The position numbers and the translations under genes are program-made. Shown piece by piece: positions 2,603 to 22,909 of a stretch of DNA of 64,000 bases. Below the pieces are notes generated by a model. It saw only the letters and a program-made list of their open reading frames with translations. It did not search any database and was not told where the DNA came from. Position 1 is the stretch's first letter, and each line of letters opens with the position of its first letter. The stretch spans positions 62,001-126,000 of the IMG/VR virus record IMGVR_UViG_3300009703_004110. One strand, 5' to 3'.

Positions 2603-2667
2603 AATTATCCTTAATGACATTTATATCTGGTATCACTATATTAAGATATTACCAGTTATGATGACCA

Positions 2668-3693
2668 CTAAGTATTTTCTTTTATAGACATTTTCTTCTT
2701 TCTCTTCTCAATTTTTGATGCTTGAGAGCTTTTCCTGATTGCCTTAAATAATCTTTTGTGATTTTTTACCAAGAAATCAAATGCATGACCAGACTCTATT
2801 TCTGTAATTTCAAATTGGCAATAAGCAAGATGATACAATAAAGGCTCTCTATCTGGATAGATAGGATACTCTATATATCTATAGTCATGAACGGCTATAC
2901 CTTGCGCAGGGCTTATTTTTTCTGTAAATATAGGCACACCCTCGATGATCGCCTCTATTGAAGTCGCACTAGCCGGGGCTACACATGCCCAAGCACCCTT
3001 TAAATCAACTTGAATTGGTCTATCAATAGAGCTGCTTAGGACTTCCGCATTAGATATGCCCTTTACGGCTCTGTAGATTGGCCTTATATCCGTTCCTCCT
3101 GGCTTTGGTCTTACTCTGATTGGTCTATCAGTATTCGCTCTGATAATTTTCATAGTATTCTTTAGCCAGTTTGGCTTCATTCCCATTGCTCCAGAAAAAA
3201 ATCCAGTTGGAGGGCAGACTAGGACGTACTCACCTTCGGTTTTCCACGGCTTAAGCTTTATATTGAATTTCTCAAAGCGATCTGCCGGTCTTCTCTCTAT
3301 CTTGGTTGGATGAATCCCATTGGCTACTATTCTAAAGCTTGGAGGATTTCCAGAATGAACACCCTTCCATCTATAACCTCTATCAAAATATGCATGGTCT
3401 ACATAAAGTAAATCACCAGCACCATCTTGTAAGCATGGCTTAACAATCTTGTGAATAGTATCTTTACCAAAAGCTACAGATAGCCCTGGATATATCTGGT
3501 CTACATCTTGAGACGCATATAAATGCCCATACCCTCTGGATGTATCAACTAGTTTAAGCATGACATATCGCGGGAATAATTTATGCCTATCCATATAAAA
3601 GTTGATATTAAAACGAGACTCGTCCCTATCGCTAGTTTCTTTTGCTACTTTAGCGACCCTCTCTATCCAGCCCGGCTCTAATCTCCATTTCAT
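2668..3693 (-). CDS. KpsS/KpsC (Capsule_synth)-like GT-B glycosyltransferase, paralogue 1
   Basis: Shares with the other four paralogues: YV(D/E)xxYF, VLVCPP, RPIRVRPKP, SIEAIIEGVPIF, YPDREPLLYHLAYCQF. Confidence 0.55.
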   Translation of the reverse strand: MKWRLEPGWIERVAKVAKETSDRDESRFNINFYMDRHKLFPRYVMLKLVDTSRGYGHLYASQDVDQIYPGLSVAFGKDTIHKIVKPCLQDGAGDLLYVDHAYFDRGYRWKGVHSGNPPSFRIVANGIHPTKIERRPADRFEKFNIKLKPWKTEGEYVLVCPPTGFFSGAMGMKPNWLKNTMKIIRANTDRPIRVRPKPGGTDIRPIYRAVKGISNAEVLSSSIDRPIQVDLKGAWACVAPASATSIEAIIEGVPIFTEKISPAQGIAVHDYRYIEYPIYPDREPLLYHLAYCQFEITEIESGHAFDFLVKNHKRLFKAIRKSSQASKIEKRKKKMSIKENT

Positions 3694-3694
3694 A

Positions 3695-4684
3695 TTATGC
3701 AGGACCCATTATAAAGTCTTTTCCGGCCCTCTCTAAAACTTTGTAACCGAAGGTTTTAATGATATACTTTTTTGTTTCATTATTTATTCTGCCCTCTAAC
3801 TCTAGTTCAACTATCATGATTGGCTGGCATCTTTTGATTGTCTCTGTAGCACCTTTAATAACTGCATCTTCAAAACCTTGTACATCTATTTTGATAAGAT
3901 CTACATTTTTAAGCTTGAAGCTGTCAAGCGTTCTTACCGCTGTACCAGTTCCTTTGGTTGCGTATGTATTTCCACTATTTCCAGCTTCAATATTTAAAAA
4001 TACCTCGCCCTCTTCGCTTCCTAGGGCGATATTGTGACATATAAGGTCTGGGCAGTTTTTGATGAAGCATTCATAACTCTCGGCTGACGGCTCGAATGCC
4101 ACCACTCTTTCAAAATGCTCAGACATCGCCTTGGAGTAAAACCCAACATGTCCTCCAATATCTACGGACGTGTTTCTGCCCGATAAATATTTTAGAACCT
4201 TTACGTAGGTATGGTATTGATATCTATCCGTATCTCTTGGAAAATGGTCGTCATCTTTTGGAAGTGCCATCTCACTTGGCCTGCGCTTACTTGCTATCAT
4301 AAAGACTCTTTCGCTATTATTTAGAAAGGTATCTATTCTCCAGCGATGCTGAAAGTGTCGCGCAAAGACGCGCTCATTTTTTAAAAACCTGCTGCTTGGC
4401 ACCTTGGAGTCTATAAGAATAGTATCAGCAACCTTTGGAAGATTTTCGATGATCTTTCTTATATCCACATCCCTGTTTCTTTCTAAGAATTTAGAAACAA
4501 TAACTAGGTCAAAAGAGTGAGCGTCCAGACTTAGAGCCTCAGATGGTGACACGAACCTAACAGAAGCTGTCGGGAAAAATTTACGTAGATGCATCATAAG
4601 ATCACCAGTTTTATTTCCATAAACTCCGATTGTCTCAAACCCGTAACCACGTAAAGAGCGTTTAATTTGTTTCAAATTATGCAT
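3695..4684 (-). CDS. FkbM-family methyltransferase with an extra N-terminal Rossmann-like domain
   Basis: SVDIGGHVGFYS...VVAFEP...IALG...LDSFKL.NVDLIKIDVQGFE..VIKGA; N-domain contains SFDLVIVSKFLE. Confidence 0.8.
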   Translation of the reverse strand: MHNLKQIKRSLRGYGFETIGVYGNKTGDLMMHLRKFFPTASVRFVSPSEALSLDAHSFDLVIVSKFLERNRDVDIRKIIENLPKVADTILIDSKVPSSRFLKNERVFARHFQHRWRIDTFLNNSERVFMIASKRRPSEMALPKDDDHFPRDTDRYQYHTYVKVLKYLSGRNTSVDIGGHVGFYSKAMSEHFERVVAFEPSAESYECFIKNCPDLICHNIALGSEEGEVFLNIEAGNSGNTYATKGTGTAVRTLDSFKLKNVDLIKIDVQGFEDAVIKGATETIKRCQPIMIVELELEGRINNETKKYIIKTFGYKVLERAGKDFIMGPA

Positions 4685-5540
4685 CTAATATTCTCCAAAT
4701 CTTTGGTGACTTCATTTCATGAACAGTAAATTGTCCATAGGATAAGTGTCTCATCCACATTTCCCTATTTGGATAAACAGGGTCATTTATTTTTGACAGA
4801 CGCTTTAAGCCCATTGGCCTAGAAGCATTAGGCCCAAGTGTAAATACCGGAATGCCGTGCATTACCGCCTCAATGCCGGCTACGCTATTATATGTTACCA
4901 TAGCAAAAACATCATTGTCAAAATCATCCTGGATTATGTTTTCAGTCAGTCTAAGGGTTCTAACTCTAGGTTTCAACCTTACTCTGATCTCTTTATCAGT
5001 ATTTTTCTTGAGCCTTTTGACGATTTTTTTTGTCCATACTTCAGCATCAATATTAAAATAGTGAGCGGACTTTAAGGATGGGGGACAGATTAAAATTGTT
5101 CCGCCTTTCTTCTTCCACGGAAGAAGAATCTTATTCCAGTCAACGCCTTGGTGCTTATATATAGTCTTTTGTGCCAGTTTATATCTATCATTGGGACGTG
5201 GTATAATCTTGTCAAATTGCACATCATTTTTAACAATTCTATGGAATAGCTTTCCTGTAGTAAGAATCGGCTTACCCTTTGGATCTGTATAATACTTACT
5301 AAGATTCCCAAAGTAACCGGTCTCTACATAATAATAGTCGATACCGTATTCCAAAGCTAAATGCATAACTCTTCTGTCACGAAGCCCTCTAACTAAAATC
5401 TTAGAGCCTCTATATTTTTCAATATTATTCATGAAGTCTTTTTTGACCATGATTTCTGCATCACAAGACTTGGCAAACTCACTAAGAATGCTGTCTCCTG
5501 GCCTAAAATAAAACGATCTATTCTTCATATCATTTTTCAT
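4677..5540 (-). CDS. KpsS/KpsC-like glycosyltransferase, paralogue 2
   Basis: YYYVETGYF, ILICPPS, IRVRLKP, TYNSVAGIEAVMHGIPVF, YPNREMWMRHLSYGQFT. Confidence 0.6.
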   Translation of the reverse strand: MKNDMKNRSFYFRPGDSILSEFAKSCDAEIMVKKDFMNNIEKYRGSKILVRGLRDRRVMHLALEYGIDYYYVETGYFGNLSKYYTDPKGKPILTTGKLFHRIVKNDVQFDKIIPRPNDRYKLAQKTIYKHQGVDWNKILLPWKKKGGTILICPPSLKSAHYFNIDAEVWTKKIVKRLKKNTDKEIRVRLKPRVRTLRLTENIIQDDFDNDVFAMVTYNSVAGIEAVMHGIPVFTLGPNASRPMGLKRLSKINDPVYPNREMWMRHLSYGQFTVHEMKSPKIWRILDA

Positions 5541-6357
5541 TTACAATCCCCAGGCGTTTATGAAGCCCCTTATCGTGTCGGAAGTATTCGGCTAGCATGC
5601 CTCTTTCTATTACATGTGATTGGCTTCTGCGCTTATTCGAATAATTCGATACTAGATCATTACCCGTTATACCTTCTCTCTCTTTCATTTCAAGAACTAC
5701 ATTGCCAAACATGCCGCCGTCGTCCCACATCATGTATCTTCTAAAGACTTTATTTTTATACTTATCGATCCAGCAATTCAGAACTCGTCGACCTGTTCTG
5801 TCCGTCCGAAAGCCTATAAAACCAGACTCCACTCCGAGGCCCTTCTTGGGCCTCTCACTTCCCCAGTGATAGAAAAATGCCTTTCCGCCAAAAGCTTTAT
5901 CCATGAGCCTTGGTGTTAGGTTTTTAGTTACTTTGGCATCCGCATCTAAAAAAACTATGGCATCATATTGATTTCCATAGTGACTCATTGCATAATCTAA
6001 AGTTACAATTTTTCTAAACCATCCTGCCGCTCTAAAGTTCCACGGCAAAAAAGCTTGAGGCACCTTCTTCCTGTCAGCTCTTCCTCCCATTTCTGGCGGA
6101 ATAACATCAGAGTTTTCTTTTAGCCACTTGACCAGAAATGGATTTCTGGTCATATTGTATGCTTTAATTCTGTGTATATGTTTCTCTCGAATTTTTCGAG
6201 ACTCCATATATGCTGGCTTCATTGCATTATATTTAAAACCTTCATAACACAATAGGAGATCGCCCTCAGATTCGCTCTTGAAAAAAGAGTTGATCATATC
6301 TTTCGCGGACGCTTTCCAGATACGATGGTTGAAGGTGGTTACATATAATACATTCAT
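5530..6357 (-). CDS. GT-A fold glycosyltransferase (DxD)
   Basis: FRKIV...IVFLDADA...VESGFIGF...WDDGG...HDKG. Start revised to ATG 6357 (GAGG SD). Confidence 0.65.
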   Translation of the reverse strand: MNVLYVTTFNHRIWKASAKDMINSFFKSESEGDLLLCYEGFKYNAMKPAYMESRKIREKHIHRIKAYNMTRNPFLVKWLKENSDVIPPEMGGRADRKKVPQAFLPWNFRAAGWFRKIVTLDYAMSHYGNQYDAIVFLDADAKVTKNLTPRLMDKAFGGKAFFYHWGSERPKKGLGVESGFIGFRTDRTGRRVLNCWIDKYKNKVFRRYMMWDDGGMFGNVVLEMKEREGITGNDLVSNYSNKRRSQSHVIERGMLAEYFRHDKGLHKRLGIVNEK

Positions 6358-6370
6358 AAATACCTCTTTA

Positions 6371-6378
6371 TATTTATA
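6371..6378 (-). promoter_or_regulatory. Possible T4-late-like promoter TATAAATA in the divergent gap
   Basis: Exact TATAAATA on the minus strand 13 nt before ATG 6357; the genome is AT-rich, so this is weak evidence. Confidence 0.25.
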
Positions 6379-6431
6379 TACTTGCATAGTAATATAGTGA
6401 CAAATGAAAAGTTAGAGATGGGGTTTTCGAA

Positions 6432-7454
6432 ATGAAAGTTGGTATATTTTTGGCGACTACTAGTGGTAAGGCAAAGCAAGATATTATGCGAAGTTTTGCC
6501 GCTGGTGTCAAAGCCTCTGGTGACCTTGCCAAAATATTTGATAAGCGAGAATATCGCAAGTGTGATTTAGCTTTAATATTTGGATTTTATAATGACCAAA
6601 ACATGGGAGCAATACAGTCCTTTAGAAAAAAAGTTTATGAAACCCACGAAAGTCGTGGAAGAAAATGTTTGTTTGTCGATGCAGATTTTTTGAGATTTGC
6701 AGGAAAAATTAGAGCCGAAGCTCCAGATGATCCAACTCAGCACCTTAGAATCTCTCACGGTTCCATCTTTCCAAGTCGCGCTAATTACTTCAATGAGTTT
6801 TCCGACAATAGACGATGGAAAGAATTAAGAAGAAGAAAGCATATAGTTGTAAAAGATTACCGAACCGATGGGGATCATATCCTAATGTTACTCAATAGCA
6901 GTAGCAAATATGGCAGAGGCTGGTCTGCTCGCGGAACAGATAGTATGTACTGGCTGCAGAAAAGTTTATCCGAAATTCGTCAGTACACAGATCGTCCTAT
7001 TCGAGTTAGATTTCATCCTAATGAAAAGAAGGATTTAAGAGAGTCTAGACCAGTCGAGGCCTTACAGAAAATGTATGGAAATATTACCTTTTCTGGTGGC
7101 GTTGTCGGATCTAATAAAGCGATACTTCCACCCAGAACTTTGATAGAGGATTGTGATAACGCATGGGCCGCCGTAGTCCATACGACCTCTGCTTCCGTTA
7201 TACCAATAATAAATGGGATTCCTGTCTTTACAAGTAGTCGAGACTGTATTGCTTTTCCTATCGCAACACATCGTTTATCAAAAATAGAGAAGCCGAGCCT
7301 GCCAAAACGAGAGCAATGGTTTTATGATCTATCCTATAGTCTATGGAACGTAGAAGAATTGAGGGATGGAGTTGCGTGGAAAAGAATTAAAAGCAGAATA
7401 AACTCTAGCGGAGACTATTCTAAAGCAAAAGCTAAAAAGCTTGGGATTATTTGA
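6432..7454 (+). CDS. KpsS/KpsC-like glycosyltransferase, paralogue 3 (only substantial plus-strand gene)
   Basis: 340 aa; DRPIRVRFHP, SASVIPIINGIPVF, PKREQWFYDLSYSLW..EELRDG.AW match the minus-strand paralogues; 8-nt convergent stop overlap at 7447-7454. Confidence 0.7.
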   Translation: MKVGIFLATTSGKAKQDIMRSFAAGVKASGDLAKIFDKREYRKCDLALIFGFYNDQNMGAIQSFRKKVYETHESRGRKCLFVDADFLRFAGKIRAEAPDDPTQHLRISHGSIFPSRANYFNEFSDNRRWKELRRRKHIVVKDYRTDGDHILMLLNSSSKYGRGWSARGTDSMYWLQKSLSEIRQYTDRPIRVRFHPNEKKDLRESRPVEALQKMYGNITFSGGVVGSNKAILPPRTLIEDCDNAWAAVVHTTSASVIPIINGIPVFTSSRDCIAFPIATHRLSKIEKPSLPKREQWFYDLSYSLWNVEELRDGVAWKRIKSRINSSGDYSKAKAKKLGII

Positions 7455-8085
7455 TATTCTGATTTACAAAGACCCATCCGTTTCTATTTAAGAATGAATC
7501 ATTTATCTTTTTAACAATCACATCGTCACCTTTAAAGATATAATTAAATCCGCCGAGACCTTTCTTCACTCTCATAGTCGAGTTCGCTCTGACTCCCTGT
7601 GTTAATATTCCAGACACTTTAAAGTTATTTTCTGAAAAGATGCTATTCCAATAATTAAAGTGTCTTTCATTAACATGATGGTATCCGCCCTGCCCTGGTC
7701 TTGCGTGCGTCACCACTAGATACTTGCAAGCCGAAAACGTTGCCATGAAGTTGCCTATATATTTCTCTTCGACATGTTCCAGAAACTCAACTGACCATCC
7801 TATATCAAAGTATCCCGATCTTGGTAAACTTGGTATATTTTTGGCCCTAAGCGGCCCAACAGCGTAGTCATGTATATGCACTTCAGGCTTATCTCTGAAG
7901 GTTGGGTCTCCATCCACACCCTGAACTATGAGTCCTAATTTCTTGGCCATTTCAATTTGCCCACCCGGACCACAGCCTATGTCCAAAAAGGTCTTGGCTC
8001 CGACTTCATTCTTTAGGTACTCTAGTGCCCCGTAGTCACTCCATGTTTTATTGTTATGTCCACCTAGATGTTCAGCTCGTCCCAT
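7447..8085 (-). CDS. Class I SAM-dependent methyltransferase
   Basis: FLDIGCGPGG; FDIGWSVEFLEHVEE; PGQGGYHHVNE. Confidence 0.8.
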   Translation of the reverse strand: MGRAEHLGGHNNKTWSDYGALEYLKNEVGAKTFLDIGCGPGGQIEMAKKLGLIVQGVDGDPTFRDKPEVHIHDYAVGPLRAKNIPSLPRSGYFDIGWSVEFLEHVEEKYIGNFMATFSACKYLVVTHARPGQGGYHHVNERHFNYWNSIFSENNFKVSGILTQGVRANSTMRVKKGLGGFNYIFKGDDVIVKKINDSFLNRNGWVFVNQNIK

Positions 8086-8965
8086 TTAAATGCTCCCAGA
8101 ACAGCCCTTGGCTGAGTTCTTCTAATGTCCACTGCTTGTATGCTAGATCGTAAAGCCATTGCGTTCTATCTGGCGTAATAGGGTCATTAATTTTTGTTAA
8201 GTCTGTGTTTGCTATAGGATACGCCATTGAGCCTATATCGCAAGCAAACACAGGAATTCCTTGTATTGCCGCCTCTACGGCTGTATTTGAATTAAATACC
8301 ACAACAGCTTTAGCTCTTTTTAAATCCATTGCAAGCGAGTTCTGAGACCATTCTAGCCACTTTGGTGTAGCAACCTCATACCACTCCTTTCTTCTTCTAA
8401 AAGAGGGGTGTGGTCTAAATACAAGCTTCCTATGCGTATTTTCAGACACTGTCTTAATAGTGTTGCTAAGCCAGTCCATATAGCCCTGCACGGATGCTGG
8501 ACGCTTTTTATATCCAGTGTTCAAATGCTGAACATTGCTATCCCACGGCACTTGTCCGCAGATTAAAATATTCTTTCCTTTGACCTTCCAATCTCGCACA
8601 TCAACATCCAGTTTTTCAAATCTATCTTTAGGACAATTTTTAACGACAAAGTCTGCACGACCATTAATTCCATTCCATCCAACAGAGTGATAAATACTTC
8701 TATTTATAAAGCCTCTTTCGAAGGTCAAAACTTTGTGCCCTAGCGAGTTTTGCGTATCATACATTTCTTTTCTGAAGCTTCCTACTTTAGACATTCTTTT
8801 GTGAAATCCGTATAGTGCGGCAATTTCTGATGGACGATATTCATCCTCATATAATACCTGATAATCTTCACCAACAGCATCTAACCCGGCTATTCCGGCC
8901 TCTAAAGTCGCTCTGACAATTCTATTTGTTCCTCTTCTAATATAGACGATGATTTTGGTTTCCAT
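8072..8965 (-). CDS. KpsS/KpsC-like (GT107/GT99-type, candidate beta-Kdo) transferase, paralogue 4
   Basis: GQVPWDSN (QxxxD), VFRPHP (HP motif), FNSNTAVEAAIQGIPVF. Start revised to ATG 8965 (METKII). Confidence 0.65.
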   Translation of the reverse strand: METKIIVYIRRGTNRIVRATLEAGIAGLDAVGEDYQVLYEDEYRPSEIAALYGFHKRMSKVGSFRKEMYDTQNSLGHKVLTFERGFINRSIYHSVGWNGINGRADFVVKNCPKDRFEKLDVDVRDWKVKGKNILICGQVPWDSNVQHLNTGYKKRPASVQGYMDWLSNTIKTVSENTHRKLVFRPHPSFRRRKEWYEVATPKWLEWSQNSLAMDLKRAKAVVVFNSNTAVEAAIQGIPVFACDIGSMAYPIANTDLTKINDPITPDRTQWLYDLAYKQWTLEELSQGLFWEHLNGTS

Positions 8966-8975
8966 TTTTAAATCC

Positions 8976-9710
8976 CTAAGTACTTTGACGGTCAAAAAAT
9001 TCTCTCAAATAGGTCTTCTGAATCTTTCTAAACTCTTTTCTTTTCTTGCTTCGTCCTTTGCCAGCCCAAATTTTACTTTCTGCGCTGTAGTTCCAGTCAA
9101 TGTATTTTTTAGATAGATTAAAAAAGACTATATCCTCTCTAAGCTTAAAATATTCATAAGTCTTATTAAGAGCCTTCTGATCTGAGTACCAATTTAAAAT
9201 ATTTTCCTCTCTGATTCTTTTACAGTATTCATCCAAGAATTCTAAAGTAACCGGCCTGTTATTTAAGAAGATTATTCCGCTCAAAATATTTCCTATATCT
9301 CTCTCTTTTGGTCTGAAATGAAACATAATATGACATTTATCTTGCAGATCGAATGCACCATCTATATTATCTATTAGAACGGAATCTGCATCTATATATA
9401 CCAGATTATCGAGCTTATCTACAGTCAATAACTCTCGTATGACCTCTCCTCTAATATTTGCACTATAACAGATTACCTCACTTTTTCCCGCCCACTTAAC
9501 CGGGTCTGTGCTGAGGCTCCAGTCGTTCCTCTCTCTTACCACTACCGGCATATTTCCTACTTGCAAGGTTATCTCGTCTATAAATTCTTTTGAAGCATTA
9601 ATTAAATACAAATATATATTGACATCGGCTTGATGCTTTAAAAGTGAAGCTATAAGCGCCCTTCCGTAATTACCATAAGACTCTGTAATTATAATTAAAA
9701 TATTCTTCAC
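8976..9710 (-). CDS. GT-A fold glycosyltransferase (GT8/GT77-like)
   Basis: LVYIDADS, LSGIIF, WYSDQKAL, YIDW...IWAGKG. Confidence 0.7.
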   Translation of the reverse strand: MKNILIIITESYGNYGRALIASLLKHQADVNIYLYLINASKEFIDEITLQVGNMPVVVRERNDWSLSTDPVKWAGKSEVICYSANIRGEVIRELLTVDKLDNLVYIDADSVLIDNIDGAFDLQDKCHIMFHFRPKERDIGNILSGIIFLNNRPVTLEFLDEYCKRIREENILNWYSDQKALNKTYEYFKLREDIVFFNLSKKYIDWNYSAESKIWAGKGRSKKRKEFRKIQKTYLREFFDRQST

Positions 9711-11374
9711 AGCACTTCCGCTAAATGCCTCCAGGCACGTCCTCGACTAATCTCCTTCAAAGTCCATTGCGAATAGGCCATGCCGGCCGTCCACTTCTTT
9801 AAATTCGGATATGCTGGATAATTAATGCTTCGAATATTATGAACTGATGCAGAGTATGCTATACTTTTATTGCTAATCATGAATACTGGGACACCAGCAA
9901 CTAAAGAATCTACGGCTATTTCGGAGCCGTAAGTTACGACGGCATAAGCATTTTCTAAGTCTTTTGTAAGACTGTGATATGACCATCTCATATTATGCGG
10001 AATTGTATCTTTAAATAATTCTTTATCAGAAAAGCCTGGGGCTGGCCTGAATACTATCTCCATTCTAGTATTCTTTTTTAGAATACGTATAGTTGCTTTA
10101 AGCCAAGATAAATAATTATTTATGGCCACATTTTGATCTTCTATATTTTCGTGAAGATCTGTCATATTATAATCCCATGGAATATCACCACATAATAAAA
10201 TATATTTTCCACTTTTACACCATGGTTCTAGTCTTACATTTAATTGTATACGCCTATCTCCAGCTGGTTTTCTAATATTAAAATTATCTACTCCGTTTGG
10301 GTTATACCAACCAGCAGAATGATAAGAATTATTTTTATGAAAGCCTTTATCAAAGATAAGTGTTTTTCCATTATAAAGCTGTTGAGAGTCGCAAATAAAT
10401 TTCTTTGATCTTCCTGCCTTGGTTGTTATATTTGGATGACCATATATAACGGCTATTTTAGATGGGCGATATTCTGACTCGCTCGCTATTGCGACCTCTT
10501 GTCCGTGCCTTTCTATACCACTTTTTGCCGCATTTAAAACATCTATTGATGATGCCGTTCTTTTGCGTTTTGCCACAGCAGTACTTTCGTGATACACGAT
10601 TATTTTAGATGTTAATAATTTGTTTTTCTCTGGGCTGATAAATAACATATCGAATGCGTTTCGATAACTTTCTTGAGCGATTACAAAAGGACCCTTTTTC
10701 TTGCTTCTGCCTTTGCCAACCCATAAGCATGACTTATGGCTGTACTTCCAGTCTATATATGTTTTACTTATATTTCCATAACTTTCTGGATAGTTATGAT
10801 ATAAATAAGATAGAGACATTTGATCTGCAAACCAAGTTAATATTCCATTGTCATTAACTTTGTCATTATATAAGTTTACAAAATCTCTTGCTTCTTGATT
10901 ATTAACATAAAACATTATGCCGCTTAAAACCTTGATTAGACCATCTTTAGGCCTAGCGTGAAATGACACATTGTACTTTTTATATCTTTCAAATAGGCCT
11001 TCTATGCTTTTTGTTATTATAGAATCTGCGTCTATATACAATAAAGAGTCAATATCTTCTGTCTCAAGCAGCTCTTTGATTATGCTAACTCGAACATTCG
11101 CACTAAAGGCCATAAGCTCGCTATATATCAAGCCACCAGCTCTTTTATCTAGTTCGTCACTTAACTCTGGACGATCTATGTTTCTGATGTTAATGGGGTA
11201 TCCAGAAGTTTTATATTTCAACTCTTCTGTAACATCTTTAGGTGTGTTAATAAGATATAAATATATATTAAGTCCCTTTTCATGAATGAAAAAAGAAGCT
11301 AATAATGCCTTAGTGTAGTCTAAATAAGATTCTGATGAAACAATTAGAATGTTTTTTTTTATCTCACTCTCCAT
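9707..11374 (-). CDS. Fusion of GT-A glycosyltransferase and KpsS/KpsC-like domain (paralogue 5)
   Basis: N-half aligns by eye with 8976-9710 (NIYLYLIN, SAN.R, YIDADS, YIDW, GKGRSKK); C-half aligns with 8072-8965 (EYRPS.IA..YG, GK.IL.CG..PWD, FRP.P, G(I/V)PVF). Start revised to ATG 11374. Confidence 0.7.
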   Translation of the reverse strand: MESEIKKNILIVSSESYLDYTKALLASFFIHEKGLNIYLYLINTPKDVTEELKYKTSGYPINIRNIDRPELSDELDKRAGGLIYSELMAFSANVRVSIIKELLETEDIDSLLYIDADSIITKSIEGLFERYKKYNVSFHARPKDGLIKVLSGIMFYVNNQEARDFVNLYNDKVNDNGILTWFADQMSLSYLYHNYPESYGNISKTYIDWKYSHKSCLWVGKGRSKKKGPFVIAQESYRNAFDMLFISPEKNKLLTSKIIVYHESTAVAKRKRTASSIDVLNAAKSGIERHGQEVAIASESEYRPSKIAVIYGHPNITTKAGRSKKFICDSQQLYNGKTLIFDKGFHKNNSYHSAGWYNPNGVDNFNIRKPAGDRRIQLNVRLEPWCKSGKYILLCGDIPWDYNMTDLHENIEDQNVAINNYLSWLKATIRILKKNTRMEIVFRPAPGFSDKELFKDTIPHNMRWSYHSLTKDLENAYAVVTYGSEIAVDSLVAGVPVFMISNKSIAYSASVHNIRSINYPAYPNLKKWTAGMAYSQWTLKEISRGRAWRHLAEVL

Positions 11375-12167
11375 AGCCAAACTCACGCAGTCTGAGCCAT
11401 TCATCACCGTACTTCCAGTCTATTCCTCGTTTTGGTTCCCATATATCAAACCAAGGACCACCATTAGTGAAGTGAACGTTCTTAGCTTCTAAGCTTTCGG
11501 GAGAATGGCCTGGTAACCAATTCCACTCCTCTGGCAATTCACCTATATCTTTATCCTCTAGCCACTTCAGATTATGTAACCAAGTTCCTGGCTTAGTGCT
11601 AACATCAGCCGCTGTTAAATTGTGATGAGCCTGATGGCCGCAATTCCAGAGCATAACACTGGACCAGTTTTTTCTACTATAAAATGTTTGTGGGCATCCG
11701 TAGAGCTTGACAGCAACTTTGCCACCATCCTCAAACTGATGCTTAACACACTGTAAAGCTGGCGCGTCTGCAGTAGCGTAGCGATCAAATATCTCACACG
11801 GGTCGCTGCGAAAATACATATCGTTATCCATAAACAAAGCAAACCCTTCGTGCTGGTTTAAAAAAGGAACTAAAAATCTTGAAAAACTGAACTCTGTCGA
11901 ATACGGCTTACCATCGAACCTGTCTACCATATGGTCTACTTTATTTTGCCCCCATACAGTGGATTCTACATGCGGAACCCTAAAATATAATCCACTTCTT
12001 CTTAAGCTTGTCTGATTTAAGGTCACAATATTAAGCGGCCTAGAGGCGTGTCTTAGGATTGAGTCTGTTAAAACTTCAGAGGCATGATGATCTCTTGGGT
12101 CATAACCGATGTATATTGTATCTAGCTTTCTAACTTCTTTATCATTCTGATTAATGACTTTTCTCAT
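11364..12167 (-). CDS. GT8-like glycosyltransferase
   Basis: IYIGYDPRD, STEFSFSRFLVP, ALFMDNDMYF, RKNWSSVMLWNCGH, WNWL, HFTNGGPW. Confidence 0.75.
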   Translation of the reverse strand: MRKVINQNDKEVRKLDTIYIGYDPRDHHASEVLTDSILRHASRPLNIVTLNQTSLRRSGLYFRVPHVESTVWGQNKVDHMVDRFDGKPYSTEFSFSRFLVPFLNQHEGFALFMDNDMYFRSDPCEIFDRYATADAPALQCVKHQFEDGGKVAVKLYGCPQTFYSRKNWSSVMLWNCGHQAHHNLTAADVSTKPGTWLHNLKWLEDKDIGELPEEWNWLPGHSPESLEAKNVHFTNGGPWFDIWEPKRGIDWKYGDEWLRLREFGYGE

Positions 12168-12954
12168 CAGCAATTCTCCTTACTATAGACTCTATAATTT
12201 CGAGTGTTTGCGCGGGATCACGAGTTTTATATGCAAAGCCCGTAGGTTTAATAGCGTCATATAAAGCAGCATCATTACCAAATTCTTCGCATCTATCACC
12301 TACGAACCATATTTTTTCATAGTCATCGAAATGCTTTAGAACATATGTTTTATCCCAGCCTGACGGATAAATATCAAACGAGGTATTTCCACCTAGTACC
12401 GCCGTTACTCTGCTATCTATCCTTTTAAGCCTTCTATTTAACCTTCCCAAAAAACGAACTCTAAGGCCGGTCTCTTGATCTAATTCTCTAAACTGTTCTC
12501 GTTGATCTGTATTAGCATTTCTACCGATCGGGCACCAATTTATCATTGAGCCTCTAAGCTCTAAAAAATTACCCGTTAAGGGGATTAAAAGCCCTTTCTC
12601 TTTGACAAGACATTTTTGTAAGTCAAAAATAATGGCCATTATTCCGGCCATTACTTCAGCACCTAAATGCTCTTCCATATTATTGAAATAAATCTCTTCA
12701 TAGTCGTCGATCTTATCTTTATGCTTATAAACCTTTGTGCCATTACATGGTAAAATTATAATTCTATTTAAAAGCATATCTTCAAATACTTGCGGCATTT
12801 GCTCTTGCAAGTAATTATAATCGCTTCCTGAAACTACTCCCACTTCTGCGACCCAAAGCAACTCCATTAATGCTTTAGCTATTTCATCTCCCATTTGGCC
12901 GCGCGCAGGTGTTAATGTGCCGTCCATGTCGAACAGCACCAGATGATCGGACAT
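12151..12954 (-). CDS. Phosphomannomutase, eukaryote-type HAD family (PMM2/Sec53-like)
   Basis: LFDMDGTLTPAR, VSGSD, ELRGSMINWCPIGRNA, GGNTSFDIYP.GWDKTY.L, FVGD....GND..LY. GGAG SD before ATG 12954. Confidence 0.9.
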   Translation of the reverse strand: MSDHLVLFDMDGTLTPARGQMGDEIAKALMELLWVAEVGVVSGSDYNYLQEQMPQVFEDMLLNRIIILPCNGTKVYKHKDKIDDYEEIYFNNMEEHLGAEVMAGIMAIIFDLQKCLVKEKGLLIPLTGNFLELRGSMINWCPIGRNANTDQREQFRELDQETGLRVRFLGRLNRRLKRIDSRVTAVLGGNTSFDIYPSGWDKTYVLKHFDDYEKIWFVGDRCEEFGNDAALYDAIKPTGFAYKTRDPAQTLEIIESIVRRIADEKSH

Positions 12955-12955
12955 C

Positions 12956-13426
12956 TTAACTCCTAGATTTAGCAACCAGTTCACTACTGCTCTGAACCTT
13001 TCCACCGCCAACATTCCACAACATGTAGATGCCAAGTTCATTACAGACCTTTACTTCTGGTACGTTATCAGATTTTCTGTCGCCACCATTGGCAAAGAAA
13101 TCTGGACATAGTCTTCTTAGTGCTTCACAAACTGAACCATCCGAGTCATCCACATGGCTCACATGCACTACGCCTCTTATCGCAGATAATATTTCTGCTC
13201 TCTCCTCAAAAGACATAAATACATAACCTTTCTTTCTCATTAGCCACTCATCACTGTTGGCCACAACAATAACTTCCTTGCCACCCTTAGCGGCATCTAA
13301 AATCATTTGAACGTGGCCAACGTGTATTGGGTCAAATCCACCGGAAACAACTACCGAACTCTGTTCGTACCCGTCATAAGTCTTTTTGGTTTCCCAACTT
13401 CCATCATCATTTAACGGCATCATCAT
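12956..13426 (-). CDS. HxGH-family cytidylyl/adenylyltransferase (TagD / RfaE domain II-like)
   Basis: VVVSGGFDPIHVGH, VVANSDEWL.RKKG, FANGGDR, GGGKVQSSS. Confidence 0.8.
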   Translation of the reverse strand: MMMPLNDDGSWETKKTYDGYEQSSVVVSGGFDPIHVGHVQMILDAAKGGKEVIVVANSDEWLMRKKGYVFMSFEERAEILSAIRGVVHVSHVDDSDGSVCEALRRLCPDFFANGGDRKSDNVPEVKVCNELGIYMLWNVGGGKVQSSSELVAKSRS

Positions 13427-14000
13427 CTCCTCTGGCTACTTGCCCTAAGTATCCACCATGATGTCTCTTAGCGTACTCCTCTTTCGTAAATTTTTTCTTT
13501 TCCATCACGACCATAGCTAGTACGTCGCCAATAACTAACATCACTGTTGTTGAGCATGTTGGGGCCATGCCTAGTGGGCATACCTCCGGGTATCCTCCGG
13601 TTTCAATCACTACATCAGATTGTACTGCCAGCGGCGCATCTTTATTAGCAGTGACTGTGATTAGCTTTAAATCACACAGTTGCTTTGCCAAATAAGTAGA
13701 CTCAATAATCTCTCGTGTCTTGCCAGAGTTAGAAAAAGCAATCATTAGATCGCCCTCTGCTACCATTCCAAGATCACCATGTTGAGCTTCGCACGGATGA
13801 AGATAAAAGGCAGGCGTCCCTGTTGACGCGAAAGTAGCGGACACTTTTCTAGCTATTAGCCCCGCCTTCCCCATTCCTATAAAGACAAGCTTGCCTTTAC
13901 ACTTTAGTATCTCCTCTACTGCTTCATCAATTCCGGTCAAAGGAATGGCTTTAATTGCATTAACCTCTTCCTTCAGCACCTCTTTAGCTGTTCTTCGCAT
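13407..14000 (-). CDS. kdsD: Arabinose-5-phosphate isomerase, SIS domain only (no CBS pair)
   Basis: FIGMGKAGLIARKVSATFASTGTPAFYLHPCEAQHGDLG; SNSGKT.E; APT.STT; HHGGYLG; ends at 197 aa. Confidence 0.85.
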   Translation of the reverse strand: MRRTAKEVLKEEVNAIKAIPLTGIDEAVEEILKCKGKLVFIGMGKAGLIARKVSATFASTGTPAFYLHPCEAQHGDLGMVAEGDLMIAFSNSGKTREIIESTYLAKQLCDLKLITVTANKDAPLAVQSDVVIETGGYPEVCPLGMAPTCSTTVMLVIGDVLAMVVMEKKKFTKEEYAKRHHGGYLGQVARGDDDAVK

Positions 14001-14748
14001 CTATCATACCTCGCATTATTGCTCTTGCTTTATCTAAGTCTTTCTGTGTGTCAACTGAAAATTTCTCAGAATCATTACAGTTGGTTGTTCTTATAGTAAT
14101 CTTATTAAATAGCCAAGTAAGCTGCTCTAATTTTTCAGTTTCTTCTAGATATGACATTGGTAAATTTTTAATGATATCTAAAGTAGGACGTGTAAAGCCA
14201 TATGTGCCTACATGTTGGGCATACGGATTATATAGTACCCGATCTCGGCAATGCGGTATTGGACTTCTGCTAAAATATATTGCATCATTATTCTTATCTA
14301 GAACTACTTTAGCTATAGTATCATCGTTTATAGCGTTTTCTGATAGCTCTGTTACAAGAGTAGTGACGGCTATTTCTTTTGGGTCTAAAGATCGCAAGAA
14401 GTCTACTGAATCTTGTACAATTTTTAATGATATTAGAGGCTGGTCTCCTTGGATGTTCAAAAAGTAATCATATCCTGGGTATAATTCCGCCACTTCTGCG
14501 ACCCGTAAAGTGCCGGATATATGATCATGACTTGTCATTACTACAGTTCCACCAAATCCCTCTACTGCTTTAAAAATTCTGATATCATCGGTTGCAACCA
14601 TAGTCGTTGGCAGAATTTTAATTACTCGCTCATAAACCCATTGTATCATAGGCCTGCCACAAATATCCGCCAGAGGCTTCCCTGGCAGCCTGCTAGAATC
14701 ATATCTAGCAGGAATTACTCCAAGCACATTTGCTGACATATTACTCAT
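13984..14748 (-). CDS. kdsB: CMP-Kdo synthetase (3-deoxy-manno-octulosonate cytidylyltransferase)
   Basis: IPARYDSSRLPGKPLADI.G.PMIQWV, SGT.RVAEV, NIQGDQP, YFSRSPIP, H.G.Y, E.LEQL.WL, SVDT..DL. Confidence 0.92.
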   Translation of the reverse strand: MSNMSANVLGVIPARYDSSRLPGKPLADICGRPMIQWVYERVIKILPTTMVATDDIRIFKAVEGFGGTVVMTSHDHISGTLRVAEVAELYPGYDYFLNIQGDQPLISLKIVQDSVDFLRSLDPKEIAVTTLVTELSENAINDDTIAKVVLDKNNDAIYFSRSPIPHCRDRVLYNPYAQHVGTYGFTRPTLDIIKNLPMSYLEETEKLEQLTWLFNKITIRTTNCNDSEKFSVDTQKDLDKARAIMRGMIDAKNS

Positions 14749-15706
14749 CTTCTTCACACATCCAAAATGGGTTCATTCTAAATAGCCCGGTCATTGCGTC
14801 TCTGACAGTTCCGTCCTTCGCAATACCTCTGGCATGGAAGCCCCTTGTGTTAACAATAACCAAAGAATTCCCATCAATAGCCTCTGCGGTTATGGAATTT
14901 CTATAGCCCATTGCCTTGATTTCTTTAGCAGAAGCTCTAAAAGACCCCTCTCTAGTTCCCTTGTTTGATGATTTATATGCATCAATAATTAATTTCTGAG
15001 ACCACGCCAATCTTCCTGGAATACTTCTATGAGATCCTTTAACGTATCTTGTTGGTCCTTGCTCTAAAGTCATTGGGGCTAAATAAAACCAAAATTTAAT
15101 AGTTGGATGGAAAGTATCTTCGTGTATTTGCTTTTGTATATCATTATCTCTATGAACTAAGCGCTCTACTCGCTTGTCATGGAATACGAAGTCGTCTCGT
15201 CCATTGGCCATTCTAACTAGATCAATTAACTCTGGATTATTAAAGAAGCTGAAAAGCTCTTCGTGATGTTTATTTAATCGCAAATATGAGTGCTTCCAGT
15301 TATCAAATCTATCCCTTGGTTGCTCCGCTATTAATCTATAAAATTTCTTTCTAATTCTCTTAAGCTCTTTGCCTTTAATAAAGTCAGGAATTATAACCAT
15401 CCCATCTTCATAAAAGGACCTGATGTAATCATTATGTAGATTGTATGTCATCTCTCGATCATATATAGCTTCCGCCAGGACTACTCTGAAAATATAGAGC
15501 CCCTTTCTATTAAGCTCTTCATCTTTTAAAACTGGAAAGCGTCGAAATTTTTTCTCCTTACTGAAAATCACACTTCTCTCCGCTTCCGGCAGTGAATATA
15601 TAATATCTAGTATTCCAGAGAAATCTTTTTCTCCAAATACTGAGCAAACCTCCTCTTCGTCATATTCATATTCACTAAGAACTCTTTCTATATATTCTCT
15701 CCTCAT
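14741..15706 (-). CDS. Fe(II)/2-oxoglutarate dioxygenase, PhyH-like
   Basis: IHEDTF (HxD), FWFYL, GPTRYVKGSH, distal NTRGFHARG. Confidence 0.75.
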   Translation of the reverse strand: MRREYIERVLSEYEYDEEEVCSVFGEKDFSGILDIIYSLPEAERSVIFSKEKKFRRFPVLKDEELNRKGLYIFRVVLAEAIYDREMTYNLHNDYIRSFYEDGMVIIPDFIKGKELKRIRKKFYRLIAEQPRDRFDNWKHSYLRLNKHHEELFSFFNNPELIDLVRMANGRDDFVFHDKRVERLVHRDNDIQKQIHEDTFHPTIKFWFYLAPMTLEQGPTRYVKGSHRSIPGRLAWSQKLIIDAYKSSNKGTREGSFRASAKEIKAMGYRNSITAEAIDGNSLVIVNTRGFHARGIAKDGTVRDAMTGLFRMNPFWMCEEDE

Positions 15707-21428: not shown

Positions 21429-22136
21429 TTAAATCCATTTAAAAACATAGTCAAACTCTACGTTTCCAACACATGTTGCGCCCAAATTCTCCAGAAATTT
21501 TCCAGAAGCAAAAGGCTCTTGCTTTATTTTACGCGCCCTTAACTTTTCTTCTGGCAATTGTTCTATCACAATTACTGGCTTACTTATTTTAATAGTTTTT
21601 ATTGCTCCATGTAATACGTCAAGCTCATATCCATCTACATCGATTTTTATATAATCAACATTTCTAAGCTTAAAATGATCTAGTGGCAGAATCGGCATTC
21701 TTCCCTCTAAAATATCTCCACTGTACTTGATTGTTTTGGTAATAGAGTTACCTTGCATTGAGCCTATAAAACCATAATGTGCGCCTAAGCCACATGGATA
21801 TATTGTCACATTCGAAGTATCTACATTTTTTGCCAATAATGGCAGCCACTTCCATCTTGGTTCAAATGCAAAGACATGATCAAATTCTTGTCCAAGGTGT
21901 CTGCACCACTCTCCAAATCTGGCTCCAATGTCCAGCGCTATTCCTCTGCCTTCACAATGATCCAGACTAAGCTGCCTTTGCTTTATTTGACCGGGACCCC
22001 TACAGACGTCTGCCTTAATATTCGTCTTTTTAAGATAGGCCGATTGCTTGTAAAGATCTTGCTTGGTGATGATCTGATCTCTCATATAAGTATAAGATCC
22101 GAGATCTTCTATCGTATAGGGATTCACATTAAACAT
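21429..22136 (-). CDS. FkbM-family methyltransferase
   Basis: ALDIGARFGEW, VFAFEP, LDHFKL.NVDYIKIDVDGYE..VLHGA. Confidence 0.8.
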   Translation of the reverse strand: MFNVNPYTIEDLGSYTYMRDQIITKQDLYKQSAYLKKTNIKADVCRGPGQIKQRQLSLDHCEGRGIALDIGARFGEWCRHLGQEFDHVFAFEPRWKWLPLLAKNVDTSNVTIYPCGLGAHYGFIGSMQGNSITKTIKYSGDILEGRMPILPLDHFKLRNVDYIKIDVDGYELDVLHGAIKTIKISKPVIVIEQLPEEKLRARKIKQEPFASGKFLENLGATCVGNVEFDYVFKWI

Positions 22137-22909
22137 TATTGTAATTGACCTCTTATCTTGAGAGCTTGTACCAAGATACCTTCTAGTCTATCAAGCTGCA
22201 ATTGTGTTGCTGAATCACTGCCTGCTGAAGCCGGATCTGGATGTGTTTCGATAAACAATCCATCAACTCCAACTGCTACTGCCGCATTAACCATTGTGCC
22301 TATCATAGTCGGATCACCACCAGTTACGCCATGCGTCTGATTAGGCATCTGAAGGCAATGAGTGCAATCCATAATTACTGGAGCAAACTTTTGCATCCTT
22401 GGGATAGAAGTAAAGTCTACGATTAAATTGCTATACCCAAATGTCGTTCCTCGTTCAGTCAAGAAGACTTGTTCATTTCCAGTAGAACGTACCTTTTCTG
22501 CTGCAAATCCCATCATTTCTGGAGAGACAAATTGACCCTTCTTTACGTTGACCGGAAGGCCCGTCTCTCCTGCCGCAATTAACAGGGCGGTCTGCCTACA
22601 TAGAAAGGCCGGGATTTGAAGGTGGGTCACGTACGGAGCTACTAGGGCTGCTTCATGACTCTCGTGTATGTCTGTGATTACAGGCACATCATATGTATCA
22701 CGAATTTCTTTCAAAATGCCCAGCGCCTCTTGTTGATCGATTCCCGTAAATGAAGTTAGTCGCGTACGATTCGCCTTCGCCCATGATGCCTTAAAGATAT
22801 AATCTATCCCAAGCCTATCCGTCATCTCCTTAACTGCCTCAACAACTTGAAACGGTGTTTTTCTGTTTTCAATTGCGCAAGGTCCGGCCATCAATATTAA
22901 CTTCTTCAT
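22136..22909 (-). CDS. kdsA: Kdo-8-phosphate synthase
   Basis: AGPCAIE, FKASWAKANRT, TDIHE, QIPAFLCRQT, VNVKKGQF, ERGTTFGY, DCTH, FIETHPDP..A.SD. Confidence 0.95.
   Translation of the reverse strand: MKKLILMAGPCAIENRKTPFQVVEAVKEMTDRLGIDYIFKASWAKANRTRLTSFTGIDQQEALGILKEIRDTYDVPVITDIHESHEAALVAPYVTHLQIPAFLCRQTALLIAAGETGLPVNVKKGQFVSPEMMGFAAEKVRSTGNEQVFLTERGTTFGYSNLIVDFTSIPRMQKFAPVIMDCTHCLQMPNQTHGVTGGDPTMIGTMVNAAVAVGVDGLFIETHPDPASAGSDSATQLQLDRLEGILVQALKIRGQLQ

What the first reader, a model, noticed from the sequence alone, without database searches (positions are those of the whole stretch)
8072..11374. Tandem duplication of a two-domain GT cassette: one fused copy, one split copy
Seen: 9707-11374 encodes [GT-A]-[KpsS-like] in one chain. 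The next two genes encode the same two domains separately and in the same order (KNILI..ESY..Y..AL.AS..H...NIYLYLIN; YIDADS; YIDW.YS..S..W.GKGRSKK; then KIIVY...EYRPS.IA..YG; GK.IL.CG..PWD). The fused copy lost the Gln and His of the putative catalytic motifs. Inference: the GT-A and GT-B enzymes act as a pair (e.g. an alternating polymerase like bifunctional capsule polymerases), and the duplicate diverged in specificity.
Basis: partly seen in the sequence, partly recalled or inferred. Interest (0 to 1): 0.62.

Follow-up and report, generated by a model that had tools for sequence, protein, structure and literature searches.

The report
Duplicated phage glycosyltransferase pair, one fused
A 332-kb ocean phage carries two adjacent copies of a two-enzyme sugar-adding module, a GT8-like transferase plus a Kdo-transferase-like enzyme, once as two genes and once fused; in the fused copy the Kdo-transferase half has lost key catalytic residues and is probably no longer an enzyme.

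Summary
The 555-aa gene at 9707-11374 (-) has two domains. They match the next two genes in the same order: 41% identity to 8976-9710 and 36% to 8072-8965.

The N domain is a GT8-like retaining GT-A with a DXD motif. The C domain has the modified GT-B fold of retaining beta-Kdo transferases (KpsC and WbbB, Z 14-15). The split copy carries their QXXXD and HP motifs.

The window is part of an uncultured jumbo myovirus. Its glycan island also encodes KdsA, KdsB-like and KdsD-like enzymes.

Trees place the fused and split copies in one phage-specific clade (100/98), so this is a real, old duplication. The split state is conserved in four independent assemblies. It is ancestral and not an artefact.

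The polymerase inference is only partly supported. The fused Kdo-transferase-like domain evolves about 7-10 times faster than the split one. It keeps 33 of 50 family-conserved positions. It lacks Gln and His here, and the Asp nucleophile in the orthologue, while its GT8-like half stays intact.

The fused copy is therefore most likely an active GT-A joined to a non-catalytic Kdo-transferase-like module. Biochemistry is untested.

The parts
9707..11374 (-). Fused gene (555 aa). GT8-like GT-A domain is about residues 1-248 (nt 10631-11374), linker about residues 243-253, beta-Kdo-transferase-like domain about residues 254-555 (nt 9710-10615).
11024..11032 (-). DXD motif (D115-A-D117) of the fused GT-A domain, intact.
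10172..10186 (-). Degenerate QXXXD motif in the fused copy: D397-I-P-W-D401. The Gln is replaced by Asp; the Asp nucleophile is kept.
   Evidence: motif roles from PMC10148158 and PMC12887879
10040..10042 (-). Ala445 in place of the His of the HP (CMP-binding, general-acid) motif in the fused copy.
8976..9710 (-). Stand-alone GT8-like GT-A gene (244 aa, GTG start overlapping the fused gene's stop as GTGA). DXD is at nt 9384-9392.
8072..8965 (-). Stand-alone beta-Kdo-transferase-like gene (297 aa). Intact QXXXD (Q138-D142, nt 8540-8554) and HP (H186-P187, nt 8405-8410).
8966..8978 (-). A/B junction: TAG stop of the GT-A gene (8976-8978) plus a 10-nt spacer before the ATG at 8965. The two genes are in different frames.
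6432..7454 (+). Third paralogue of the B family (340 aa, opposite strand). HP is kept; there is no QXXXD.
5530..6387 (-). Distant DXD-containing GT-A-like gene directly upstream of a B paralogue. Probably an older copy of the A-then-B module.
   Evidence: E 3e-4; L009 orthologue, E 1e-6; hhalign prob 70%, E 4e-5
4677..5540 (-). Fourth B-family paralogue (287 aa). Borderline Pfam Capsule_synth hit. Lacks QXXXD; has KP instead of HP.
2668..3693 (-). Fifth B-family paralogue (341 aa). Lacks QXXXD; has KP instead of HP.
22136..22909 (-). KdsA (Kdo-8-phosphate synthase), which supplies the presumed donor pathway.
   Evidence: NF003543 338.6 bits > 242; TIGR01362 328.6 > 314
13984..14757 (-). CMP-sugar synthetase of the KdsB/NeuA type (CTP_transf_3).
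13407..14000 (-). KdsD/KpsF-like arabinose-5-phosphate isomerase (SIS domain only; below the equivalog cut-offs).

Best explanation
An uncultured marine jumbo myovirus carries a glycan-biosynthesis island of about 33 kb. Within it a two-gene module has been duplicated in tandem. The module is a GT8-like retaining GT-A glycosyltransferase followed by a retaining beta-Kdo-transferase-like enzyme with a modified GT-B fold.

The split pair (8976-9710 and 8072-8965) is the ancestral form, and both of its enzymes look catalytically competent. The GT-A most likely adds an alpha-linked sugar from a UDP-sugar. The second enzyme most likely adds beta-Kdo from CMP-Kdo by double displacement through Asp142. 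The phage's own KdsA, KdsB-like and KdsD-like enzymes would supply the CMP-Kdo. Together the pair would build a Hex-Kdo unit of a phage-specified glycan.

In the second copy the stop and spacer were lost, giving one 555-aa chain. Its GT-A half stayed under constraint. Its Kdo-transferase-like half lost catalytic residues and now evolves fast, yet stays open and foldable. It most likely serves as a non-catalytic module fused to an active GT-A, for acceptor or glycan binding or as a scaffold.

Shown: the folds, motifs, duplication, conservation of the split, and rate asymmetry. Inferred: the donor sugars, the acceptor, and the non-catalytic role.
For: Pairwise identity is 41% and 36%.

B domain. 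The AF2 model has pLDDT 95.5. The top Foldseek hits are all beta-Kdo GTs (KpsC, WbbB, KrkA; E 7e-9 to 3e-6). VIA gives Z 14-15 for KpsC and WbbB against at most 9.9 for generic GT-B folds. A family profile hits KpsC 6mgd with QXXXD and HP aligned. The roles of Asp, Gln and His come from PMC10148158 and PMC12887879.

A domain. The family profile hits GT8 structures at E 1e-6 to 1e-4. The AF2 model has pLDDT 96.4 and its top fold hits are XXYLT1, glycogenin, GlyE, LARGE1 and 3tzt. The DXD is invariant.

Kdo pathway in the locus.

Phylogeny. The fused C domains and the split B genes form one clade (100/98), with fused end branches of 1.77 and 1.45 against 0.21 and 0.14. The A clade has 91/83 support, and AU tests do not reject congruence with the B tree.

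The same fused + split order occurs in L009. Only split pairs occur in L011 and L015.

Window vs L009 identity: fused N 52%, fused C 34%, A 64%, B 79%. The whole fused gene is the least conserved of 22 syntenic genes.

The fused C domains keep 33 of 50 family-conserved positions, against 44-46 for the split B genes. The losses differ between lineages: Q138D and H186A here, D142G in L009.

The A family is also fused to true Capsule_synth domains in P0220, P0232 and P0263.
Against: No enzyme assay exists. The donor could be another CMP-ulosonic acid, since NeuB and a second CMP-sugar synthetase are also in the locus.

Three other B paralogues lack QXXXD, and two of them lack HP, yet they are about 70% conserved between phages. 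Motif loss alone therefore does not prove loss of function in this family.

The window's fused copy still has the Asp nucleophile and an acidic residue at the putative base position.

PMM (45%) and one methyltransferase (51%) are nearly as divergent as the fused gene.

The complex prediction for the split pair gave no verdict.

The acceptor (host envelope or virion protein) is unknown.
Confidence: 0.6

Rival explanations
1. One reading: both copies are fully active GT-A + GT-B pairs. Each acts as an alternating two-activity polymerase like the bifunctional capsule polymerases, and the fused copy has simply diverged in donor or linkage specificity.
For: A fused dual-module polymerase with a beta-Kdo GT module is a known kind (KrkA, PMC12887879). 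The A family is fused to Capsule_synth domains elsewhere. The window's fused copy keeps Asp401 and the fold-defining residues. Other paralogues lacking these motifs are still conserved.
Against: Gln and His are lost here and the Asp nucleophile is lost in the L009 orthologue. These are non-overlapping losses of residues whose mutation inactivates or cripples KpsC, WbbB and KrkA. Seventeen of 50 conserved positions are lost in each lineage. The branch is 7-10 times longer. A natural variant carries a 46-bp frameshifting deletion in this domain.
Confidence: 0.2
2. The fused C domain is decaying sequence with no function, on its way to deletion. Only the GT-A half of the fused gene matters.
For: Fast evolution and loss of catalytic residues. 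L011 and L015 have no fused copy. L014 has the domain broken by a 46-bp deletion.
Against: About 300 codons remain open in two lineages that have diverged to 34% identity. Thirty-three of 50 conserved positions, including core Gly, Pro and Trp residues and the C-terminal YxQWT..E..G..W.HL block, are kept in both. That argues for purifying selection on the fold. L014 is a single 2.2-kb scaffold and could be an assembly error or a rare variant.
Confidence: 0.15
3. There was no duplication. The similarity reflects independent acquisition of family members, or the split is an assembly or frameshift artefact.
For: Raw identity of the fused C domain to the split copy (36%) is no higher than that of many free-standing homologues (38-45%). 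The two open frames at the A/B junction overlap by 26 nt, so a single indel could fuse them.
Against: Clade support is 100/98 for B and 91/83 for A. The order is colinear and the domain boundary coincides with the gene boundary. The split is conserved with different spacers in L009, L011 and L015. Stand-alone proteins are the rule in both families.
Confidence: 0.03

Closest known systems
KpsC / KpsS (GT107, Pfam Capsule_synth) and WbbB (GT99): retaining beta-Kdo glycosyltransferases
   Same: Best structural matches to the 297-aa protein (Z 14-15). QXXXD and HP motifs align. An acidic residue sits in an E-x-G-F-x-x-R block in the N-terminal half. CMP-Kdo supply genes are nearby. KpsC is itself a tandem duplication of the module within one chain.
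   Different: Sequence similarity is at noise level (profile E 0.06; 10-17% identity). There is no Pfam Capsule_synth hit for the finding's proteins. The proteins are smaller (about 295 aa), have no membrane anchor region, and are phage-encoded. The acceptor is unknown.
KrkA (GT140), the E. coli K13 capsule polymerase
   Same: One chain joins a retaining beta-Kdo GT module to a second glycosyltransferase module and builds an alternating Kdo-containing repeat (PMC12887879). It is also 'deeply divergent' in sequence with the same fold and motifs. It appears among the fold hits (Z 11.8).
   Different: Domain order is reversed: the Kdo GT is N-terminal in KrkA. Its partner is a ribosyltransferase, not a GT8-like GT-A. 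Both KrkA modules are active, whereas the fused copy here lacks key Kdo-GT residues.
GT8 retaining GT-A enzymes (glycogenin, XXYLT1, GlyE, LARGE1 xylosyltransferase domain, WbbM C-terminal domain)
   Same: Top fold matches for the 244-aa protein. Profile hits to GT8 structures. Invariant DXD.
   Different: Below Pfam GT8 gathering score (16.7 and 10.5 bits against 24.3). The family has its own C-terminal signature, Y.DW ... W.GKG.(R/S)K.
Non-catalytic GT-B-like partners of active glycosyltransferases (GtfB with GtfA; Asp1 of the accessory Sec system). Named from my own knowledge; Asp1 structures 5vaf and 6lnw do appear among weaker fold hits.
   Same: A GT-B-like module that has lost catalytic residues yet is retained next to an active transferase, presumably for substrate binding.
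   Different: Here the module derives from a Kdo-transferase-like enzyme and is covalently fused. Binding has not been shown.
Glycan and LPS gene islands of large marine phages (P-SSM2, S-SCSM1, S-SCSM2R with kdsA/kdsB and 13 GTs; PMC12801897) and virion glycosylation in mycobacteriophages (Freeman et al. 2023, as cited in PMC12619734)
   Same: Phage-encoded sugar-nucleotide pathways together with many glycosyltransferases.
   Different: This phage is not a cyanophage (no psbA) and has no close cultured relative. No Kdo-transferase-like enzymes were reported in the passages of those papers that I read.

Membership tests
Retaining beta-Kdo glycosyltransferases (GT99 / GT107 / GT140 fold group) | Modified GT-B fold resembling KpsC and WbbB more than generic GT-B enzymes | tested here: met
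   Split copy model pLDDT 95.5. Foldseek ranks 1-25 are all KpsC, WbbB or KrkA. VIA Z 13.6-14.9, against at most 9.9 for the next folds.
Retaining beta-Kdo glycosyltransferases (GT99 / GT107 / GT140 fold group) | QXXXD motif (Gln binds the Kdo carboxylate; Asp is the nucleophile) | tested here: met
   Split copy has Q138-VPW-D142, 100% conserved in 113 homologues and aligned to the KpsC motif. It is NOT met in the fused copies: DIPWD here and QRPLG in L009.
Retaining beta-Kdo glycosyltransferases (GT99 / GT107 / GT140 fold group) | HP motif (CMP binding; general-acid His) | tested here: met
   Split copy has H186-P187, 100% conserved. Not met in the window's fused copy (A445-P446). Met in the L009 fused copy.
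Retaining beta-Kdo glycosyltransferases (GT99 / GT107 / GT140 fold group) | General-base Glu in the N-terminal half | tested here: inconclusive
   An acidic residue is conserved in the (E/D)-x-G-F block in all paralogues. Its structural equivalence to KpsC Glu66 was not checked on coordinates.
Retaining beta-Kdo glycosyltransferases (GT99 / GT107 / GT140 fold group) | Transfer of Kdo from CMP-beta-Kdo with retention | not testable with these tools
   Only context is available: KdsA, KdsB-like and KdsD-like genes in the same island.
Pfam Capsule_synth (PF05159; KpsS/KpsC) by sequence | Score at or above the gathering threshold (20 bits) | tested here: not met
   No hit for the fused or split proteins. 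Only the paralogue at 4677-5540 reaches 20.8 bits, and 19.2 bits in the genome search.
GT8 (retaining GT-A) | GT-A fold with GT8 enzymes as nearest structures | tested here: met
   Model pLDDT 96.4. XXYLT1, glycogenin, GlyE, 3tzt and LARGE1 at E 2e-10 to 2e-9. Profile hits 6mw5, 3tzt and 5gvv.
GT8 (retaining GT-A) | DXD metal and nucleotide-sugar binding motif | tested here: met
   D107-A-D109 is invariant in 69 family members. It is present in both fused orthologues.
GT8 (retaining GT-A) | Pfam PF01501 at or above the gathering score | tested here: not met
   16.7 bits (fused) and 10.5 bits (split) against a cut-off of 24.3.
Bifunctional alternating polysaccharide polymerases (KrkA, WbbM, K4CP type) | Two catalytically competent transferase modules in one chain | tested here: not met
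   The fused copy's second module lacks Gln and His here and Asp in the orthologue. Seventeen of 50 conserved positions are lost.
Bifunctional alternating polysaccharide polymerases (KrkA, WbbM, K4CP type) | Iterative alternating addition in vitro | not testable with these tools
   Needs enzyme assays.

The most novel reading that the evidence does not exclude
The 297-aa protein represents a large, unannotated new family of retaining Kdo (or other ulosonic-acid) transferases that is mainly phage-borne. Its homologues sit inside head-morphogenesis modules of small phages (L016, L017), and here the island sits next to giant baseplate and fibre genes. The family may therefore glycosylate virion proteins rather than host envelope. 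In the jumbo phage the fused paralogue would have turned a dead Kdo-transferase domain into a glycan-reading module that directs its GT8-like partner to a Kdo-bearing acceptor.
Probability: 0.2. Interest if true: 0.75.

Novelty: new variant of a known kind. Interest (0 to 1): 0.5.

Why it matters
Retaining beta-Kdo transferases are few and mechanistically unusual, and until now they have been described in bacterial capsule and O-antigen systems. Each newly characterised member has founded a CAZy family: GT99, GT107, and GT140 in 2026.

Here a sequence-unrecognisable family has the same fold and motifs and more than 200 homologues, all labelled hypothetical. It appears in phages, is expanded to five paralogues in one jumbo phage, and sits beside a phage-encoded CMP-Kdo pathway.

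The fused and split pair is a natural experiment. It gives a testable case of an enzyme module turning into a non-catalytic partner after gene fusion. It also supplies Rosetta-stone evidence that this GT8-like family works with Kdo transferases. If the target is the virion, it would extend phage virion glycosylation to acidic ulosonic sugars.

Tried and rejected
Complex prediction on the split pair (alignments A2 + A1) gave ipSAE 0.00 and 'no answer'. It is not evidence either way.

No read-level check of the 8966-8978 junction was made and read laying was not used. I did not try another route.

Folding the whole fused protein was abandoned. The combined alignment A3 placed the first 85 or so residues of the B homologues onto the A domain.

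PHROGs gave nothing for the four proteins. NCBIfam gave only a sub-threshold LIC12162 hit.

Megablast against phages found no match. tblastn found only distant C-domain hits in Caulobacter and Pelagibacter phages.

The search for homologous proteins with the fused protein found only one partial relative. Scans of IMG/VR with A5 and A6 found nothing. The metagenome scan found only the source contig and a 67-aa fragment.

dN/dS was not attempted, because at 34-79% protein identity synonymous sites are saturated.

The A-domain tree groups L011's A with the fused N domains (88/74). AU tests do not reject the alternatives (p 0.15 and 0.39), so I draw no conclusion from that grouping.

I considered a cyanophage origin and rejected it (no psbA).

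Full report
**Where the window lies.** The window is bases 62001-126000 of a 332,270-bp IMG/VR virus record (CheckV 99% complete, labelled provirus). That record is cut from a 391-kb metagenome contig. The genes are tightly packed on the minus strand. No tRNA or Rfam hits were found. Giant ORFs of 1104-3215 aa include a gp6-like baseplate wedge protein. There is no psbA and no close cultured relative. It is an uncultured marine jumbo myovirus.

**The observation.**
- 9707-11374 (-), 555 aa, the fused gene.
- 8976-9710 (-), 244 aa.
- 8072-8965 (-), 297 aa.

BLASTP gives 41% identity (E 3e-56) between fused residues 7-242 and the 244-aa protein, and 36% identity (E 2e-65) between fused residues 254-551 and the 297-aa protein. 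The domain boundary of the fusion coincides with the gene boundary of the split pair. At DNA level only one 28-nt remnant survives. The junctions are compact:
- The fused gene's ATG overlaps the upstream gene by 11 nt.
- Its TGA overlaps the GTG of the next gene.
- The two split genes are separated by TAG plus 10 nt and lie in different frames.

**What the domains are.** Pfam is nearly silent: GT8 at 16.7 bits and DUF6716 at 17.8 bits, both below threshold.

For the N domain:
- A 7-sequence profile hits GT8 crystal structures at E 1e-6 to 1e-4.
- An AF2 model of the 244-aa protein has pLDDT 96.4. Its best matches are XXYLT1, glycogenin, Gat1/AgtA-type, WbbM, LARGE1, GlyE and 3tzt.
- The DXD (YIDADS) is invariant across 69 family members.

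For the C domain:
- The AF2 model of the 297-aa protein has pLDDT 95.5.
- It matches only retaining beta-Kdo transferases at the top: KpsC, WbbB and KrkA, with Foldseek E 7e-9 to 3e-6.
- VIA Z is 13.6-14.9 for KpsC and WbbB and 11.8 for KrkA. Generic GT-B folds and epimerases reach 9.9 or less.
- The family profile finds KpsC 6mgd (E 0.06) and aligns G-Q-V-x-x-D-A-S and R-P-H-P to the KpsC QXXXD and HP motifs.

According to PMC10148158 and PMC12887879, the Asp of QXXXD is the covalent nucleophile, the Gln binds the Kdo carboxylate, and the His of HP protonates the leaving CMP. Asp-to-Ala variants are inactive and His variants are severely compromised.

By sequence, however, neither protein is a member of the Pfam families.

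**Context.** The island spans roughly 300-32700 and encodes:
- KdsA, above the equivalog cut-offs.
- A KdsB/NeuA-type cytidylyltransferase and a KdsD/KpsF-like SIS isomerase.
- NeuB plus a second cytidylyltransferase.
- GDP-mannose dehydratase, phosphomannomutase and DegT aminotransferases.
- GT10- and GT4-type transferases.
- Several FkbM and other methyltransferases.

The donor for a Kdo transferase is thus made by the phage itself. The phage genome has no initiating phosphoglycosyltransferase and no ABC-2 exporter, so the acceptor is open.

**The family is expanded.** The own-genome search finds five B-family copies, all in the window: the split gene, the fused domain, 6432-7454 (+), 4677-5540 (-) and 2668-3693 (-). 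It finds only two clear A copies. The gene at 5530-6387, directly upstream of the 4677-5540 paralogue, is a distant DXD GT-A (E 3e-4; its L009 orthologue E 1e-6; hhalign prob 70%, E 4e-5). A-then-B adjacency therefore probably occurs three times in the window. The three outlying B paralogues lack QXXXD and two have KP in place of HP. Even so, they are 70-73% conserved against L009.

**Relatives and history.**
- L009 (TARA scaffold, 122 kb) has the same order: a 552-aa fusion, then A, B, a methyltransferase, and a reversed paralogue.
- L011 (JGI, 212 kb) has only the split A and B. The gene before them is the orthologue of 2668-3693, not a fusion.
- L015 (Logan, 12.7 kb) has the split A and B, plus a second pair made of an A-family gene and a 4677-type B gene.

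The split is conserved in four independent assemblies with different spacers. Both families are overwhelmingly stand-alone: more than 200 B homologues of about 270-300 aa, and 1459 A-family representatives, mostly 230-270 aa. The split is therefore ancestral and real, and the fusion is derived.

In a careful ML tree with the other paralogues as outgroup, the two fused C domains (94/85) are sister to the split B genes of P0008/L015, L011, the window and L009 (99/87). Together they form a clade with 100/98 support. The seven phage A sequences form a clade with 91/83 support. Its internal order is unresolved, and AU tests do not reject congruence with the B tree.

The tree shows that this reflects a rate effect.

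**Asymmetric decay of the fusion.**
- Between the window and L009 the identities are: split B 79%, split A 64%, fused N domain 52%, fused C domain 34%.
- The whole fused gene is the least conserved of 22 syntenic genes, at 41% against a range up to 89%.
- End branches are 1.77 and 1.45 for the fused C domains against 0.21 and 0.14 for split B.
- The fused N domains (0.46 and 0.36) are close to split A (0.33 and 0.25).
- Of 50 positions conserved in at least 93% of 113 free-standing B homologues, the split genes keep 44-46 and each fused domain keeps 33.
- The window copy has Q138D, H186A, K56N, R89N and R267L.
- The L009 copy has D142G (the nucleophile), R89S, N101G and others.

So the catalytic losses differ between the lineages. 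The fused N domains keep the DXD and the other family invariants.

A near-identical TARA variant of L009 (L014) carries a 46-bp deletion after codon 280 that breaks the fused gene into 295-aa and at least 193-aa ORFs. Against pure decay, about 300 codons stay open in both lineages and the core and C-terminal blocks are kept.

**Coupling of the two enzyme types.** Three lines support it: the conserved adjacency, the fusion itself, and the independent fusion of the A family to genuine Capsule_synth domains. The last is seen in P0220 (677 aa) and in P0232 and P0263 (about 1200 aa, which also carry a GT29-like segment). The A family is also fused to GT2 or pyruvyltransferase domains, so it is a general-purpose module. 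In small phages the B family occurs without an A neighbour. The complex prediction gave no verdict.

**Conclusion.** This is an ancient tandem duplication of a GT8-like + Kdo-transferase-like module. One copy became fused, and in that copy the Kdo-transferase half became non-catalytic or at least strongly altered. The split pair is the candidate for making a Hex-Kdo linkage, or possibly a repeat. Whether it polymerises, and on what acceptor, is not known.

Noticed in passing
window 300-32700: A glycan island of about 33 kb on one strand. It encodes KdsA, a KdsB-like enzyme, a KdsD-like enzyme, NeuB plus a second cytidylyltransferase, GDP-mannose dehydratase, PMM, two DegT aminotransferases, PhyH-type dioxygenases, GT10- and GT4-type transferases, and at least five methyltransferases (FkbM and other types). 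The phage has no initiating phosphoglycosyltransferase or ABC-2 exporter.
   Followed up: partly
L016:6001-6909 and L017:6001-6822: Homologues of the 297-aa Kdo-transferase-like protein lie inside head modules of small phages. In L016 the gene sits among terminase, portal, scaffold and capsid-region genes. In L017 it sits between an SU10-type major capsid gene and the adaptor gene. Methyltransferase genes are adjacent in both, and sugar-modifying genes (epimerase, DegT aminotransferase) in L017. This hints at virion glycosylation.
   Followed up: partly
L014:679-2153 (TARA scaffold_87296), compared with L009:7606-9264: A variant 99.9% identical to L009 has a 46-bp deletion, with 8-bp microhomology, after codon 280 of the fused gene. 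It splits the gene into 295-aa and at least 193-aa ORFs. The scaffold is reported in two samples. It could be a real population variant or an assembly error.
   Followed up: partly
window 11352-11360 (-): A run of nine A residues in codons 5-8 of the fused gene, not conserved in L009. It is a possible slippage or sequencing-error hotspot.
   Followed up: no
window 2668-3693, 4677-5540 (-) and 6432-7454 (+): Three further paralogues of the Kdo-transferase-like fold lack QXXXD, and two have KP instead of HP. They are still about 70-73% conserved against L009. They presumably use other chemistry or other donors.
   Followed up: partly
proteins P0232 (1210 aa), P0263 (1238 aa), P0220 (677 aa): Large metagenomic multi-domain proteins combine the same GT8-like family with Capsule_synth domains. 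P0232 and P0263 have two or three Capsule_synth stretches plus a GT29 sialyltransferase-like segment; P0220 has one Capsule_synth domain. They look like candidate multi-activity polymerases.
   Followed up: no
window 1871-2620, 26771-27634, 33186-33590, 38119-38853 (all -); L009:18475-20367: Homing-endonuclease-type genes (NUMOD3/HNH, LAGLIDADG, HNH) are scattered through the glycan and structural regions. In L009 the UDP-glucose dehydrogenase carries an intein with a LAGLIDADG domain.
   Followed up: no
window 16503-17162 (-): A 219-aa ORF matches only the first 100 or so positions of the DegT aminotransferase profile. It has no counterpart between the orthologous flanking genes in L009. It looks like a gene fragment or an insertion.
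   Followed up: no
window 11364-12173 (-): The 269-aa gene just upstream of the fusion (phrog_28018) is 74-77% conserved in L009 and L011 and has no Pfam hit. By eye it carries a D-N-D motif and may be another GT-A. This was not tested.
   Followed up: no
window 33512-62580 (-): A run of giant ORFs (1516, 3215, 1104, 576, 2056 and 783 aa) follows the glycan island on the same strand. Only the 1104-aa protein (baseplate wedge) and a 143-aa baseplate protein have family hits.
   Followed up: partly
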